The notes under the pieces are model-generated. The model saw only the letters and a program-made list of their open reading frames with translations, made no database searches and was not told where the DNA came from. Below, one piece after another: positions 10,480 to 18,559 of a stretch of 64,000 nucleotides of DNA. The stretch comes from Iphione sp. A-MEVVRFRX5 (Eukaryota): NCBI GenBank assembly GCA_976226885.1, contig OZ320322.1:25482001-25546000 (forward strand), written 5' to 3'. Position numbers and translations under genes: made by a program. How positions within the stretch are numbered: position 1 is the stretch's first letter; each line of letters starts with the position of its first letter.

Positions 10480-13130
10480 AATATCTGATGGATAGTTCGG
10501 CCGATGTGAGCCAGAGTAATGCTTATGCGACAATCTGAATACAGAGGTTGAGTCCTGCAACAACATCTGAATCAAGATGATTTTTTTTACACATTTTGTA
10601 AATTAACATTGGACGAATTCGTTAGCGAATACAGATGGCTGTTTCTTCGCAAGGATGAACATTTCGCAAGAACAGGTTTTCCCAACGACTGACCACTGCG
10701 ACGAGCCTGCCTGAACCGTATAAATGACCGGCTGGAAATGATTGCCCGAGGTGTAGTCTATTGATTATCTAGGAAAGACCCTCAGACACGCCTGACAGAA
10801 AATCCTCTTGTAATTTCCTTCCTGTCTTCTTATATATTTCATGGAGTTCGTGCGGAGAATCCGCCCTGGCCATTTTTGTCGAGCAAAGCTGAGAGAAGCG
10901 CCCGCTTCTACTTATCCACTACGGCTTGCCAACCAACATCTTGGCAGCCATTGGGAGCAAATAAGCTAATTCTCATAAGTTAACAATTTCTTAACGTCAC
11001 CGAAGTTTATCAGATAATAATATGACTAATGGACTTGTAGGCTTAAACTCAGCAGAAACTAATGATATTAAACACCGATGAAAAAACATCATACGTATAG
11101 CTTAGGATTATGGTAAGTTAGTTGAAAAAAAATTATTTCAGATGGCAGGGTTTGTAACGAACTGGAGGAATAAGGCCTGTAACTGGACATCATCTGAGTA
11201 TGCAGGAGAATAAATCTAACACGAAAAGCAGACTGAAGAATGTTGAACTTTTATTTTCTTCTCGAATAGATTTCGGAATTCATGGTAATTTCATAATGAA
11301 ATAAATATGACCGTTACCATTGTATAAGCACATGTCAGAGTGTCTCGATCTTACAGACGGTCATTCGTTATAAAGCTCACCCTATATTGCTTCTTTTCTA
11401 CCCAACATTTATCCTCCAGATATATCTTCTACGAAAAAGCTGCCTTACCAGACATCCTTGTCCCTATACCGACGGTATGCGTTTGAATCCGGGAGAGATA
11501 GGACACTGTTCAGTACACTGCATTCTTCGAAGTTCCATTTGTGTTTTACTAGCTCTTGATTTATCTATGCTGCTCTAAAACCTCGTGGTCCATGTATCAT
11601 CCGAGTTAGTGAATATATGTCCCGTTCCGTTCGTCCATTGGAGAAAATCGATTGTCTAAATTCCGTTTTCCATTCTTTGTTCAAACGGTATGTCTTCCCA
11701 TTGTTTCCAATCCATTATTGTCTTTTTTCAGTGACTGATTTCCAATTGTTCTCGTTGTTGTAAATGGTAGCTCTGCTTTTCCTTCTGGCCCTATATATGC
11801 AAAGCCATTTGTGTTCGTCATTTCGTATCACTCTCTCACATTTCACAGATAACCAAGTCGGGATAAACCTGAAGTTAAACAGCTCGAATAATGATTCCCT
11901 TCACCAATTTAGGGGTAGCATTGTATAATGACCTGCTTCAGAACCTGGTCCAGCATCACTTAGTGTCGTTGGTTTGGCGCTTGATTAGATAAAATGACTA
12001 CGTCCTGTTCATAGTGATGAGTTTGTTTTTCCCTCATCCACCCGAAAGCTTATGTACATATATAACAAGTTGCATACACAATATGTTTTGTTCCAATATA
12101 AGTTCCAGGCAATCACCGACGAATCGATATATAAAAAATGCATGTATGATCCAGTAATGTGCTGCATTAAACTACAACTGCTAAACTACACTGATCATGT
12201 TGCAAATAATTCTCAAGATAAATGCAAGGGTAAAAACTTCTTTAGCAAGACGGATATTTACATCATTAGTATGAGTAATATATATGTTGATTCTGCACTG
12301 CTCAGAATTACTGTGAAATACTATATTTCACACTTATTTCTACGTTTATCAGCCACATTATCCTCTATGGAATATTGTTAGGATCAAATTATTTTCCAGG
12401 CAACGAATCTCTTGTAAGCTCCTGTAATTTCAAAAATTACAACTTTCCACACTGCCCTGAACTATCCTGAACCCATTTCAGCAACATGAAGTGAAATGAA
12501 CACAAACTTGTGAATACCACCATAGATAATTAAATCCTGTGGGGGAATACAGGTCAGTGTTCAGGTTTAACCCTACAGAAAATATCTGTCGTATGATACG
12601 GGTGGCCCTCGGGATGGACTAGACTTGCAAACGGGCTGAACAGAGTAATTGCATGGCTTAGGCCTCAAATACTTTAGGTCTAAGATCTCGGAGAACGTCT
12701 GCAAATATTTATAGTAGAGGTTGGTACTATTTCGTCCCTGAAGGCAAACTGCTATATGTGGAGCCAAGGGATGAATATTCACCTCATATTGCTAGTGTGA
12801 GTACATCGTTCACGTGTTACACACTGAGTAAACACTGAAGCAGATATTGGAAGCTGACCGACTCTGACCCCGCATTACGGCATGTGTGAGGAAGCCTTTG
12901 CATTGCCGGAGACACTTACTTTATCCAGGGCGTCAACTCCGTCAATCTATCACCTTGCGGGCTTCGTTCTCTTTCGATGTGTATGGTCTAAGCTGACTAA
13001 GATATCCAAAAGCCTGAGATGCATCCATCAGGACTTGGCCAACTTGAGTGCTGAGTGATGGAAGGGTTTCTGGACCGCAATCCCATCCATTGGGCTATGG
13101 GCCTGCGGTGTATGTTAACCTTCTTACATA

Positions 13131-13202
13131 GGGAGGGAGGGAGGGAGGGAGGGAGGGAGGGAGGGAGGGAGGGACGGACGGACGGACGGACGGACGGACG
13201 GA
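13131..13202. repeat. Compound microsatellite (GGGA)11(CGGA)7, followed by purine-rich low-complexity sequence to ~13500
   Basis: Read directly. It explains the PSVR/PPSL ORFs in the track. Confidence 0.97.
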
Positions 13203-15587
13203 CGAAGAAGGGGGGATAGAGAAGAAACAAAAGAAAGGCAGGGAGAGGAGAGGGAAGAATGATACAAAAACATAAGGGATAGGGTAGAATCTTTGAAAAG
13301 GAGAGGGGAGCACAAGGGCATACCGAGAGAGTTGAAGATACTGGGACCGAAAGAGAGAGAGAAGGAGACGGAGAGAAGTGCGAGAAAGGTGGACAGAGGG
13401 AAGAGAGAAAAGCGAAAGACAGAGTGAGATTAACAGACAGAGAACGAAGAAGTGAGAGAGAAAAGATGCAGATATAGGTAGAGATAGATCGCCAAAGACA
13501 AATGCGACATGAACCGATAGACAGTGATGTTGTCTGGAGTGTAATTCCAAAATCAGCAGGTCCTTTACTGTATATTTCCATTATTACTTGACCAAAGAAA
13601 CATTTGGTGATAGCGAAGTGATTAAATGCACAACATACATATTTGAGAAAATATTTGACGCTGAAAATGAAGCGAAGGGAATACAACTGGAAAGATACAC
13701 ATATAAATATAGGGTAACAACTAAGGAATTAAGACTGCCAATGGGGCCACATGATTTTTCCACTAACGATGCCTTGCCCTACCACCTGAGTTAGTTGTTT
13801 TATAGAAAATAAACCCTTGAGGCTAACATATAGCTTGCCCTAATCTCTGAGTTGATCTCCTGGTTCGATTGCGGACAAGGTCCCTTGCTACTGTGCATGT
13901 GTACTTTTTATACAAGTAACTTTATTGCGTAATTCTGTCATAGAAGCAACATTTAATACAGTATTACAGTATTGCTGACAAATGGTAATGTTACAAATTT
14001 GTTGATACACAACAGTATGCGCATAATGCAGAAGATAGACGGTTCTTCTGTTTGTAACTACATTTCATATTAAAAGGCACACATAAGTCAAATAATGTAT
14101 TCCGGATACGTTTGTGCCTAGGAACACTTACACAGCATCGCAGTCTTTTTCAATGCAGAAGACTAACAGGAAATTGACATCAGCAGGTACCTCCTCACAA
14201 CATGGGTACATAATGTAGTCTTTCACAAATTAAAATTAACATAGGTCAGGGTATTGCTTAGAATAATCAAGTTTGGATCCAAACGACCTAGACAGCTTAA
14301 AAAAAGGACCGGATCCAGCATGTGGTCAATTCAGCAGATTTTGTTTCTCTGTAGATCTAGGCGTGTGAAAGACATTTTCAATAAGTGAGAAACATGCAAC
14401 TGGTTTGCCCTGGGTGCATCCCTACCGCTATCGACCATCTGAAAATGAGCCAGTGTCCGTCCGCGCACGCGCAGACCCGTGGCCCGAGAAAAGCGCCATC
14501 GCATTGTCGGACGGCATTGACAGGAATAGTGACGTCACGGTTGTCAAAATGACACAGGACATGGGAATGTGCACACGCTTTGCAAACACTGCATTCAGCA
14601 ATTTCTCGTCATAGACTGACCGCTGGAGTCCAAGCAGAATGAATACCATTCAAGGACAGACGGGAAAAAAATCGCTTTCGGTGTTCGCAGATCATCTTCC
14701 CGGATGTGAGTTGCGCGCAACAAAGAAGTCTTTGCTTTGTAACCCTGTTTGCTGACATCAATATTTAGGATGGAACAATTTACAGTAATGTAACTGAAAG
14801 CATAGGCATTTTCAGCTCAGTAGTATGATTCTGTGCAATTTCGAGACTTTTTTTGTAACTTTATCTACGAATTCTTTATATGTGTATAAAATTTGGAGAA
14901 ATTTTAGTTTCTATGTACAAATTGTCACATGCAGAATGTTCCAATCATAAAAAAAAACGTTTCTTTTGTCGAACCTCTCGTTGCGCTTTTGGTTTGCAGT
15001 CAGTCTCATCAGAAATGTCCGCTTTGCGATTTGGAACATCCGGAAATGAAAATTCCCCTGAGAAGCTCATTTTCTACTGCAAAAATTGATAGTTGCAGAG
15101 CAACGGCAATCTGTTCCTCGAGAACAGGAGAGGGTGTCCTGTTTACTCAAATAGTGGCCAAATGATATCCTACCCATCAATCTGTTCAACACAGAATGGA
15201 GCACACCACTTCACCCAAAATAAGTTGCTATATGCTTGACTTCCACGTCAATTCGGGTTGGTTTTCACATTCGGGGCATATCACTGTTTTTCATTTTTAG
15301 TCCTCCATTGAACTAGCCATATCATCCTAACACTGTCTAGTAACCCTTTGATGCACAGTAGGCAGTGTATTTTAAACCTTACAGGGTAATTTAAATATGA
15401 TATCGGATAGCTTGACAACGCTCCTCTTTCTGTTTAGCTCTGGATCGCAAAATCTTACACTTATGAAAAAAAAAACATGATTAGACAGAATTTGCCACTT
15501 GATCGCTGTAAAATTGACTCGCGATGCCTGTAATCGGAAAGTCATATTTTGATTGTCGAAAACCAAACTACCGCCTACGGAGGTGTA

Positions 15588-16529: not shown

Positions 16530-16650
16530 GATAGCTGACGAACTGGACGGTTCGGGGTTATTGCACTAGAGGGCGATGCAGCAGAGGCTTATATAACAGT
16601 TGACCCAGTCTCCCCTCACTAAAACGAGGGCCTCTGCGTGTCAAGTAAGC
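16530..16650 (+). repeat. Split direct repeat A1
   Basis: 116/121 identical to 18186-18306. Confidence 0.97.
16590..16620 (+). promoter_or_regulatory. Putative TATA box plus initiator inside repeat A (also at 18246 in A2)
   Basis: TATATAA at 16590-16596, with CTCACT about 28 nt downstream. The ORF start context ACAATGG at 16698-16704 is Kozak-like. Confidence 0.5.
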
Positions 16651-16700
16651 ATCGGTAGCGCCAGTAAACAACCGCCAACCGTTATTTCAAATTCGAGACA

Positions 16701-18029
16701 ATGGCAGAGGCGCAGCTGTCTGAACATACCAGGCTGTTAGAGGACATTGTTAGGAGGCTCCAAGCACTGGAGCAAGGATCTAACAAGAAGCCAGGACCCT
16801 CGAAAGAGAAGAAGTCAACGAAGACAGGTGTGTTGATGAGAAGCAAGGCAAAGGACGATACAGGAAAGGCGAAAGACGGGGCAAGATCGGAGGACCCAGA
16901 TGATACAGATGATCCAGAGGACGAGCCACCGACTGATTCGGATGAGCAAGATGAGGAGTTCCTGCCACCTGAACACCTCAAGCAGACGGGCACCACTCAC
17001 ATCCAAGAAACACTAAGCGTGATGTACCCGGACTTGTCGTCGGGTGCAGATCCCAGGCTTAAGAAAATGGCACAATGGGCCGTAGAGAGGCAACAGGAGG
17101 ACGTTACCCGAGAGTCACACTCGAGGAGACTCTCACACATCTCGACCTTTATAGCATTCTGCTATCACTATGACATAGACATTTATAAGGTTGACTACCC
17201 AGACATATTAGTTTTTCTGGAGTATCTGGTCATGACAGGATTGAGTCCGAATGTTATCTCTCAACACTTATCTTATGTGAAGCTGGCCTTGAGGAGGCTG
17301 CATCTTCCCAATACCATTTGTGAAAATGTGTTTGTCAAAACAGCATTAAAGGGTATTCACAAATCGTCTGATCATGAGGTGCAGAGGAAATTGCCAGTGT
17401 TGTTAAAGCACTTGAGTAGCTTGGTGAATGCTTTGGCTAAATTAGGCCCTATCGGGGATACCCTTGCTACAGCCTTTCTATTTCTGTTCTATTCCTTGAT
17501 GAGGCAGTCGAACCTGGCACCCCGGTTCCCCCACAGGTTTGACCCATTGAAGCAGTTAACAACGGATGATATACATTTCGGTGACGACTCAGTGAGAGTG
17601 CGCGTGAAGTGGTCCAAGACAATTGACAAAAATAATAAAAGGTTCATTTTTCTCCCTAAAACAGGTACCTCTCTCTGCCCATATGCAGCTTTAGAGAGAA
17701 TGTTCGAGCGAACCCCCAAGGTGTCTACGGCTCAGCCGCTATTCTTGGATCCATGTACCTTCTTACCACTTACTACTAAGCAACTAGCGGATACCTTTTC
17801 GCTAATCAATAAGCAACTCGGGTTGGATTATAAGGCATTCTCCCCTCATAGTTTCCGTAGGGGAGGGGCAGTAGCATTACAAAAAGAAGGGGCCACATTA
17901 CCTCAGATTATGGCGCAGGGCACGTGGGTCTCCACCCCCTCAGTGCTGGTATACACCAAACGCGAGCAGGACTCGGTGAAAGCGGCAGCCCTTTTGAGGG
18001 CTGTAGCTCAGGCTATGCCTGCTGAGTAA
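16701..18029 (+). CDS. Tyrosine recombinase (phage-integrase superfamily, DIRS/Ngaro-type) with an N-terminal charged extension
   Basis: Uninterrupted 442-aa ORF. Catalytic motifs: LMR268QSNL, WSK306T, H383SFR386RGG, GTW409 and VLVY418. It also has the CP..A and PLF motifs and a helical core-binding region from ~aa 118. Confidence 0.95.
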   Translation: MAEAQLSEHTRLLEDIVRRLQALEQGSNKKPGPSKEKKSTKTGVLMRSKAKDDTGKAKDGARSEDPDDTDDPEDEPPTDSDEQDEEFLPPEHLKQTGTTHIQETLSVMYPDLSSGADPRLKKMAQWAVERQQEDVTRESHSRRLSHISTFIAFCYHYDIDIYKVDYPDILVFLEYLVMTGLSPNVISQHLSYVKLALRRLHLPNTICENVFVKTALKGIHKSSDHEVQRKLPVLLKHLSSLVNALAKLGPIGDTLATAFLFLFYSLMRQSNLAPRFPHRFDPLKQLTTDDIHFGDDSVRVRVKWSKTIDKNNKRFIFLPKTGTSLCPYAALERMFERTPKVSTAQPLFLDPCTFLPLTTKQLADTFSLINKQLGLDYKAFSPHSFRRGGAVALQKEGATLPQIMAQGTWVSTPSVLVYTKREQDSVKAAALLRAVAQAMPAE

Positions 18030-18039
18030 CCTTGGCTTG

Positions 18040-18189
18040 GCGGGTTTTGATATTTAATTTCGATGGATTTGTCTTGGTTGACATGCCAATTGTATATCTA
18101 GAGGTCTTGAAATGACCATTGCACAGGGAAGAGAAATAAATATCCTCTGTGTTGTCGCCACGTATTCCGGAGTTTGTGTTTGTGTGATA
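18040..18189 (+). repeat. Split direct repeat B1, containing AATAAA at 18135-18140 and a downstream GT-rich tract
   Basis: 147/150 identical to 18410-18559. Confidence 0.97.
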
Positions 18190-18306
18190 GCTGACGAACT
18201 GGACGGTTTGGGGTTATTGCACTAGAGGGTGATGCAGCAGAGGCTTATATAACAGTTGACCCAGTCTCCCCTCACTCAAACAAGGGCCTCCGCGTGTCAA
18301 GTAAGC
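18186..18306 (+). repeat. Split direct repeat A2
   Basis: Copy of 16530-16650, directly joined to B1 through a shared GATA. Confidence 0.97.
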
Positions 18307-18409
18307 CACCAACCCCCCCCCACAACTCTGGCAAGACTTGGTCTTAATTTCGTTCATAGTCTTGTAAAGAGAAGCGTATATTTATGTAAACGCGGTTGCT
18401 TAGACAAGA

Positions 18410-18559
18410 GCGGGTTTTGATATTTAATTTCGATGGATTTGTATTGGTTGACATGCCAATTGTATATCTAGAGGTCTTGAAATAACCATTGCGCAGGGAA
18501 GAGAAATAAATATCCTCTGTGTTGTCGCCACGTATTCCGGAGTTTGTGTTTGTGTGATA
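18410..18559 (+). repeat. Split direct repeat B2, containing AATAAA at 18505-18510
   Basis: Copy of 18040-18189. It forms the right end of the element. Confidence 0.97.

What the first reader, a model, noticed from the sequence alone, without database searches (positions are those of the whole stretch)
16530..18559. Recombinase-only element with retrotransposon-type split direct repeats
Seen: a 2030-bp unit A1-ORF-B1-A2-spacer-B2. Its only ORF is an intact 442-aa tyrosine recombinase. Only 50 bp separate A1 from the ATG and 10 bp separate the stop from B1, so there is no room for gag, RT or RNase H. I found no RNase H remnant in the overlapping frames I checked (~16965-17150). Known: this repeat layout belongs to Ngaro/PAT YR retrotransposons, which encode RT/RH, whereas YR-only Cryptons lack such long split repeats. 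Inference: either a semi-autonomous retroelement that brings its own integrase and borrows RT in trans, or a YR element that has shifted to a DNA-circle cycle while keeping the repeats. I cannot verify novelty without a search.
Basis: partly seen in the sequence, partly recalled or inferred. Interest (0 to 1): 0.85.

Follow-up and report, generated by a model that had tools for sequence, protein, structure and literature searches.

The report
Spliced retrocopy of a Ngaro retrotransposon
This 2-kb "recombinase-only" unit is a re-inserted copy of the spliced RNA of a larger Ngaro-type jumping gene; with four similar copies elsewhere, it shows these elements carry a conserved intron joining the start of their first gene to their recombinase gene.

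Summary
The anatomy is real: A1 (16530-16650), a 442-aa ORF (16701-18029), B1, A2, spacer and B2 (to 18559). The repeats are 96-98% identical and the ORF is a tyrosine recombinase (YR).

It is not a new recombinase-only class. The same genome holds 86-90% identical full-length relatives (C4, C2) with ORF1, RT and RNase H. They carry 2.2-2.5 kb extra at window position 17049|17050. That segment starts with GTAAGAAG after GCAG and ends with a pyrimidine tract plus CAG, which is a canonical in-frame intron. The 442-aa protein is therefore ORF1 residues 1-116 fused to the YR.

I found four more short elements from other families with the junction at the homologous site. Each is single-copy and each has long relatives with about 2.4 kb extra; two long counterparts are 97-100% identical. 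The acceptor CAG is invariant in 31 long loci.

Best reading: a retrotransposed spliced subgenomic RNA that was copied in trans and went no further. No RNA run was listed, so splicing is inferred. I found no prior description, but key Ngaro papers were not held. Other first readers noted full-length Ngaro elements in this genome.

The parts
16530..16650 (+). A1 split direct repeat. It contains a TATA-like TATATAA at 16590-16596 and starts with the shared core GATA (16530-16533).
   Evidence: 96% identical to A2. Core shown. The TATA motif was read; its function is inferred.
16651..16700 (+). 50-bp leader between A1 and the ATG.
16701..17049 (+). Exon-1-derived coding part: ORF1 (gag-like) codons 1-116 plus the first base of codon 117.
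   Evidence: 86-90% DNA identity to the 5' ends of long copies L031 and L032, where ORF1 continues past this point into GTAAGAAG. dN/dS 0.18 against L031.
17046..17053 (+). Splice junction GCAG|ATCC. Exon 1 ends at 17049 and exon 2 starts at 17050.
   Evidence: Long copies read GCAG|GTAAGAAG on the left and TTTCCATCCGCAG|ATCC on the right. The junction sequence is unique in the genome.
17050..18029 (+). Exon-2-derived tyrosine recombinase coding part (residues 117-442 and the stop codon).
   Evidence: Pfam PF00589; motifs; 89% aa identity to the L031 YR; dN/dS 0.12.
18040..18189 (+). B1 split direct repeat, with AATAAA at 18135-18140.
   Evidence: 98% identical to B2. The motif was read; its function is inferred.
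18186..18306 (+). A2 split direct repeat. It overlaps B1 by the core GATA (18186-18189).
18307..18409 (+). Spacer between A2 and B2.
18410..18559 (+). B2 split direct repeat. It ends with the core GATA (18556-18559), with AATAAA at 18505-18510. No poly(A) tail follows.

Best explanation
The unit is an integrated cDNA copy of the spliced subgenomic RNA of a full-length Ngaro-type tyrosine-recombinase (YR) retrotransposon, whose gene order is ORF1/gag-like, RT-RNase H, YR. In full-length elements a spliceosomal intron of about 2.4 kb runs from inside ORF1 (after codon 116) to just past the RNase H stop codon. Removing it joins the ORF1 start codon and N-terminal 116 residues in frame to the YR. 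All the repeats needed for replication (A1, and B1-A2-B2) lie in the two exons. The spliced RNA could therefore be reverse-transcribed by RT and Gag supplied in trans, have its termini regenerated from the internal B1A2 junction, and be integrated by YR recombination at a short GATA core. Shown here: derivation from long relatives, the exact GT..AG boundaries, recurrence in other families, and single-copy status. Inferred: that the loss happened at the RNA level, that the spliced RNA is the element's normal YR messenger, mobilisation in trans, and the dead-end fate.
For: (1) Long relatives L031 (C4) and L032 (C2) match the window on both sides of 17049|17050 at 86-90% identity and hold 2466 and 2226 extra bases there. 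The extra segment carries the rest of ORF1, RT (PF00078) and an RNase-H-like ORF.
(2) The boundaries are GCAG|GTAAGAAG and pyrimidine-rich ...CCGCAG|AT, with phase 1 on both sides, so the join is in frame.
(3) The same donor is present in L066 and L009, which belong to other families.
(4) CAG is invariant at the acceptor in 31 non-redundant long loci, lying 7-19 nt (two outliers at 43 and 85 nt) after the end of the RNase H match, with 77-97% pyrimidines at positions -10 to -6.
(5) Four further short A1-ORF-B1A2-B2 elements (L064, L065, L067, L068) have the junction at the homologous MYP(D/Q)-x5|D(P/D)RL site and open fusion frames of 386-451 codons.
(6) Each short form is single-copy, and each has long relatives with 2.40-2.43 kb extra at the junction.
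(7) The long counterparts of L067 are 99-100% identical to it. They read exon-1 end + GTAAG (C19 and C15) and TACAG|exon 2 (C19; also a 93-94% relative on C17).
(8) On the YR tree the short elements are dispersed among long ones, and the window copy is sister to L031 with 100/99 support.
(9) In 16 of 31 long loci the first in-frame ATG of the YR frame lies 43 or more codons downstream of the acceptor, so those families need a start codon from elsewhere.
(10) The termini are complete, with a shared core and no poly(A) tail, which indicates the element's own replication route and not LINE-mediated retroposition.
(11) DIRS-1 RT acts in trans, and an engineered intron is lost in retrotransposed copies (PMC7192593).
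Against: No transcript evidence is available: no RNA run was listed, so splicing is inferred from DNA alone. The donor lies in ORF1 coding sequence, so its conservation could be partly due to coding constraint. In the window's family a 4-nt microhomology (GCAG) flanks the missing segment, which also fits a DNA-level or template-switch deletion for this one copy. In L066 the RT/RH and YR frames are the same frame separated by one TAG, and 15 of 31 long loci have an ATG near the acceptor, so splicing may not be the only route to YR.
Confidence: 0.87

Rival explanations
1. A one-off internal deletion at the DNA or cDNA level (microhomology-mediated end joining, replication slippage, or RT template switching between the two GCAG tetranucleotides) removed gag-C/RT/RH from a full-length Ngaro copy. 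The GT..AG boundaries would then be coincidental.
For: A 4-nt microhomology, GCAG, lies at both boundaries in the window's family. The short form is single-copy.
Against: The boundaries match the extended donor and acceptor consensus, not just GT..AG. The same junction recurs at the homologous site in four other families, where the shared letters shrink to AG. The acceptor CAG and its pyrimidine tract are invariant across 31 long loci. All five joins are in frame.
Confidence: 0.05
2. A semi-autonomous YR-only retroelement lineage: short elements that encode their own recombinase, borrow RT in trans, and propagate as a family of their own.
For: All cis repeats and a complete YR reading frame are retained in five of five short elements, and a start codon in at least four. 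RT can act in trans in DIRS-1.
Against: Every short form tested is single-copy. Each one's nearest relative is a long element, up to 99-100% identical. Open frames are expected by chance at 0.3-3% repeat divergence: about 40% of simulated ORFs stay open after 20 substitutions.
Confidence: 0.05
3. A Crypton-like DNA element that cycles through a DNA circle and keeps Ngaro-style repeats, or a host-domesticated recombinase gene.
For: It is YR-only and has an intact ORF.
Against: Relatives 86-100% identical to the short elements carry RT/RH at the junction, so the origin is RNA-mediated. Split direct repeats of 121-150 nt are unlike Crypton ends (PMC13465315). There is no amplification. Complete element termini and 3% repeat divergence are what a decaying insertion would show. 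dN/dS of 0.12-0.18 reflects divergence between active lineages (dS 0.40, against 3% divergence within the element).
Confidence: 0.02

Closest known systems
Ngaro-type tyrosine-recombinase retrotransposons (order DIRS; A1-[ORFs]-B1A2B2)
   Same: The split direct repeat layout, the YR type and the short shared core at the ends are the same. Long relatives in this genome have ORF1 with a zinc-finger-like motif, then RT/RNase H, then YR, and no methyltransferase ORF. This matches published descriptions.
   Different: This copy lacks the C-terminal part of gag, RT and RNase H. Its single ORF is an ORF1-N::YR fusion made by intron removal.
L1 SpIREs (spliced integrated retrotransposed elements; PMC5860796)
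   Same: Both are integrated copies of a spliced retroelement RNA. Both keep the element's own integration hallmarks, are bounded by the element's own donor and acceptor, depend on proteins supplied in trans, and are evolutionary dead ends.
   Different: SpIRE introns lie in the 5'UTR or ORF1, are regarded as harmful to L1, and produce non-functional ORF1p variants. Here the intron removes the whole replication module, is conserved across deeply diverged families, and creates a complete in-frame recombinase ORF, which suggests a programmed subgenomic mRNA.
Subgenomic spliced mRNAs of retroviruses (env) and of plant Ty1/copia elements (shGAG; PMC5580714) and BARE (PMC3735527)
   Same: Alternative splicing of the genomic RNA yields a shorter mRNA dedicated to one product, and the splice event is conserved across a family.
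   Different: The product here would be the integration enzyme fused to the Gag N-terminus, not Env or Gag. The evidence here consists of genomic fossils, not transcripts.
Cryptons (YR-only DNA transposons)
   Same: A single YR gene and no RT.
   Different: Cryptons have only short 4-6 bp direct repeats. This unit has 121-150-nt split repeats and RT-bearing near-identical relatives.
SIRE, the truncated non-autonomous derivative of VIPER (PMC6681497)
   Same: An internally shortened derivative of a YR retrotransposon that keeps both ends.
   Different: SIRE is non-coding. The short Ngaro copies here encode YR and are single-copy.

Membership tests
Ngaro-type YR retrotransposon | Split direct repeats in the order A1-[ORFs]-B1A2B2 | tested here: met
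   A1/A2 121 nt at 96% and B1/B2 150 nt at 98%; B1 overlaps A2 by GATA.
Ngaro-type YR retrotransposon | Tyrosine recombinase with R..K..HxxR..(H/W)..Y | tested here: met
   PF00589 at 31.7 bits (cut-off 27.1). Motifs MRQSN, KWSKT, HSFRRGG, GTW and LVYT.
Ngaro-type YR retrotransposon | Encodes RT and RNase H | tested here: not met
   Absent from this copy. Present in long relatives: PF00078 in L031, L032 and L066, and RNase-H-like D/E/D/D motifs in L066 ORF2, read by eye with no Pfam hit. The window copy is therefore a defective derivative, not an autonomous member.
Ngaro-type YR retrotransposon | No methyltransferase domain (this separates Ngaro from DIRS-like and PAT-like elements) | tested here: met
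   Long relatives of 4.4-4.5 kb hold only ORF1, RT/RH and YR, with no methyltransferase hit in Pfam.
Ngaro-type YR retrotransposon | RT or YR groups with reference Ngaro sequences in a phylogeny | not testable with these tools
   No reference Ngaro, PAT, DIRS or Crypton sequences were available. The tree contains only this genome's own copies.
Spliced retrocopy of a retroelement (SpIRE-like) | Differs from the parental element by exactly one segment bounded by donor GT and acceptor AG | tested here: met
   for the window's family; for L067 and its 99-100% identical long counterparts.
Spliced retrocopy of a retroelement (SpIRE-like) | Carries the hallmarks of the element's own integration route | tested here: met
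   Complete A1 and B2, a shared core at both ends, and no poly(A) tail.
Spliced retrocopy of a retroelement (SpIRE-like) | The spliced RNA is observed | not testable with these tools
   No RNA run was listed, so read laying could not be used.
Crypton | YR-only DNA transposon without long terminal or split repeats and without RT-bearing close relatives | tested here: not met
   Split repeats of 121-150 nt. RT-bearing relatives at 86-90% identity.
Amplifying non-autonomous derivative family | Multiple dispersed copies of the short form | tested here: not met
   One copy each for all five short forms among the scored candidates. These counts are lower bounds.

The most novel reading that the evidence does not exclude
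Ngaro-type elements run a retrovirus-like two-RNA programme. A conserved spliceosomal intron spanning gag-C/RT/RNase H yields a subgenomic mRNA whose product, the Gag N-terminus fused to YR, is the working recombinase. Everything needed in cis for reverse transcription, end regeneration and integration lies in about 0.5 kb at each end, because spliced RNAs complete the cycle in trans. If this holds for Ngaro elements in other animals too, it would explain how the downstream YR frame, which often lacks a start codon, is expressed.
Probability: 0.55. Interest if true: 0.6.

Novelty: new variant of a known kind. Interest (0 to 1): 0.45.

Why it matters
As an object, the window element is a defective single-copy derivative of a known kind of retrotransposon, and I do not treat it as a new class. 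Its value is as a natural record of RNA processing. Five independent intron-less copies, plus an invariant acceptor in 31 long copies, point to a conserved intron in Ngaro elements. They also point to a Gag-N::YR fusion as the recombinase messenger, a feature I did not find described in the papers held here. The copies further delimit the cis-acting sequences sufficient for a full YR-retrotransposon cycle to the two short exonic ends. On the practical side, such copies can be mis-annotated as Cryptons or as novel recombinase genes.

Tried and rejected
- RNA evidence: the look-up of sequencing runs on the long element L066 listed no RNA run, so read laying was never used.
I did not try to fetch them another way. 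I used only place-reporting similarity and pattern searches.
- My first acceptor pattern found nothing. It failed because of one exon-2 mismatch and an A at position -4, and the looser pattern matched.
- The search for homologous proteins returned only four weak, unnamed hits, which said nothing about host or relatives.
- Pfam did not recognise RNase H in the long copies. That assignment rests on motifs read by eye.
- The bacterial-type promoter and terminator scan gave no more matches than chance and is irrelevant for a eukaryotic element.
- The look-up of earlier findings near this place returned nothing.
- L070 (C22:49.06M) looked junction-spanning but is a long copy read through the RNase H stop codon.
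- L069 (C4:104.8M) is probably a sixth, degraded short copy but was not resolved.
- Goodwin & Poulter 2004 and Poulter & Butler 2015 are not held, so prior description there cannot be excluded.
- The ORF at 12997-13686 has no Pfam match.

Full report
**1. Observation**

The 2030-bp unit is exactly as described. A1 (16530-16650) and A2 (18186-18306) are 121 nt and 96% identical. B1 (18040-18189) and B2 (18410-18559) are 150 nt and 98% identical. The only long ORF is 16701-18029 (442 aa), starting 50 bp after A1 and ending 10 bp before B1. It matches Pfam Phage_integrase above the curated cut-off and carries the R, K, HxxR, W and Y signature residues. A 4-nt core, GATA, is shared by the B1/A2 overlap and by both outer ends, and no poly(A) tail follows B2.

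**2. Where it comes from**

The source is a 1.18-Gb eukaryotic assembly, and the window is C22:25482001-25546000.

- A DNA search with the unit found only itself at full length. Two other loci matched in two pieces that meet at query position 517-520.
- I fetched these loci as L031 (C4) and L032 (C2). They are longer elements with the same A and B repeats at 83-90% identity.
- Their ORF1 begins with the same N-terminus as the window ORF. An RT ORF (PF00078), an RNase-H-like ORF and then the YR frame follow.
- The window lacks 2466 nt of L031 and 2226 nt of L032 between window positions 17049 and 17050.
- The 442-aa "recombinase" is therefore ORF1 residues 1-116 fused to the YR.

**3. The breakpoint is a splice junction**

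- In L031 and L032 the missing segment begins GTAAGAAG directly after GCAG. It ends TTTCCATCCGCAG directly before ATCC. This is a consensus donor, a pyrimidine tract and a CAG acceptor.
- Both sites are in phase 1, so the join is in frame.
- The same donor is present in L066 (an element with all three ORFs open and 99-100% identical repeats) and in L009, a third family.
- I examined 31 non-redundant long loci whose YRs are only 51-89% identical to the window's. CAG is invariant at the acceptor, 7-19 nt (two outliers at 43 and 85 nt) after the end of the RNase H match. Positions -10 to -6 are 77-97% pyrimidine, while neighbouring positions vary.
- The A of that CAG is a third codon position of the YR-frame extension. 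Its invariance is better explained by a nucleotide-level signal than by coding.

**4. Recurrence**

The genome holds thousands of Ngaro-type YR genes: 6757 first-look candidates. Nearly all protein matches start at query residue 109-117, which is the acceptor.

| Short element | Place | Length | Fusion ORF | Repeat mismatches (A + B) | Closest long relative |
|---|---|---|---|---|---|
| window | C22 | 2030 bp | 442 aa | 8/271 | C4 and C2, 86-90%, +2466 / +2226 nt |
| L064 | C10 | 1899 bp | 428 aa | 2/258 | C4:47.9M, 78-80%, +2396 bp |
| L065 | C4 | 1895 bp | open frame 386 | 2/248 | C13, 97-98%, +2428 bp |
| L067 | C11 | 2205 bp | 445 aa | 1/343 | C19, 99-100%, +2412 bp |
| L068 | C15 | 2092 bp | 431 aa | 4/336 | C15:21.4M, 74-75%, +2417 bp |

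- All five short elements have the A1-ORF-B1A2-B2 layout, and the junction lies at the homologous MYP(D/Q)-x5|D(P/D)RL site.
- Each short form is single-copy.
- Pattern searches built from L067's own exon ends found exon-1 end + GTAAG at the two near-identical long counterparts (C19 and C15). They found TACAG|exon 2 at the C19 counterpart and at a 93-94% relative on C17, while the short copy reads CAAAG|exon 2. The reversed-pattern controls gave zero matches.
- On a YR tree the short elements are scattered among long ones. The window copy is sister to L031 with 100/99 support.
- These are therefore independent events in different families. They do not form one YR-only lineage, and chance deletions would not recur at the same site.

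**5. Mechanism (inferred)**

A TATA-like motif in A and an AATAAA in B fit the usual Ngaro model. In that model the RNA starts inside A1 and ends inside B2, and the termini are rebuilt from the internal B1A2 junction.

Both exons together contain A1 and B1-A2-B2, so a spliced RNA keeps every repeat. It lacks RT, RNase H and most of Gag, so it must have been copied in trans. RT acting in trans, and loss of an intron on retrotransposition, have both been shown experimentally for DIRS-1 (PMC7192593). The complete ends, the shared core and the absence of a poly(A) tail argue for the element's own route and not LINE-mediated retroposition.

**6. Is the spliced RNA the normal YR messenger?**

For:
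- The acceptor is invariant.
- All five joins are in frame.
- In 16 of 31 long loci the first in-frame ATG of the YR frame lies 43 or more codons downstream of the acceptor.

Against, or neutral:
- 15 of 31 loci have an ATG near the acceptor.
- In L066 the RT/RH and YR share one frame interrupted by a single TAG, so readthrough is an alternative route in that family.
- Exon 1 is part of gag, so it would be constrained in any case.

I put this sub-claim at about 0.65.

**7. Status of the window copy**

- Its repeats differ at 8 of 271 positions, making it the oldest of the five.
- dN/dS against L031 is 0.12 for the YR and 0.18 for exon 1, with dS 0.40. That divergence therefore accrued between active lineages before insertion.
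- An ORF of this length stays open after 20 random substitutions in about 40% of simulations. Its intactness is not evidence of selection.
- There is no sign of domestication or of further mobilisation.

**8. Literature**

Searches of the held library found no description of natural splicing in Ngaro or DIRS elements, or of YR-only spliced retrocopies. The closest analogues are:
- L1 SpIREs (PMC5860796);
- the spliced gag-only RNAs of Ty1/copia elements (PMC5580714) and BARE (PMC3735527).

The founding Ngaro papers are not held, so prior mention cannot be excluded. Two other first-stage notes report full-length Ngaro elements elsewhere in this genome, which is consistent.

**9. Limits**

- No RNA run was listed.
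- Copy counts are lower bounds, because only the best candidates are scored.
- The host organism was not identified.

**10. Verdict**

The proposed new class is not supported. The unit is a spliced, trans-mobilised, dead-end retrocopy of a Ngaro-type element. The interesting residue is the evidence for a conserved intron and a Gag-N::YR subgenomic messenger.

Noticed in passing
L032:2222-2611 (- strand; G000:C2:83530221-83530610): The long C2 copy of the window's family is cut off about 95 codons into its YR by foreign sequence. That sequence carries a GIY-YIG nuclease ORF (PF01541, 22.6 bits, at the cut-off), followed by LINE-like RT-looking ORFs (L032:363-1017) that have no Pfam hit. It may be a Penelope-like or other retroelement insertion.
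   Followed up: partly
L066:3792-3794 (G000:C2:39872791-39872793): In this long element the RT/RNase H ORF and the YR frame are the same reading frame, separated by a single TAG (…IINS*VLSTDPRL…). One search reports this and several other loci as open frames of 956-994 aa. Stop-codon readthrough may be a second route to YR expression in some families.
   Followed up: partly
L067:1-755 (G000:C11:64804300-64805054): Just upstream of the short element L067 there is an RT-like tblastn match ending at L067:725. This short copy may therefore have inserted into or beside another Ngaro-type element.
   Followed up: no
G000:C4:104809416-104809763 (L069): This is probably a sixth, degraded short copy. 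The junction-spanning match covers query residues 14-131 at 42% identity with two stop codons, next to a 47-bp tandem array. No A or B repeats were recovered.
   Followed up: partly
window 12997-13686 (- strand): This is the only other ORF of 180 aa or more in the 64-kb window (229 aa, TTG start). It has no Pfam match. The window is otherwise poor in ORFs, as expected for intronic or intergenic animal DNA.
   Followed up: partly
L065:4428-4691: A degenerate tandem array of CTCTACTAGTG-like units, with alternating 12- and 20-nt spacing, lies immediately upstream of the short element L065.
   Followed up: no
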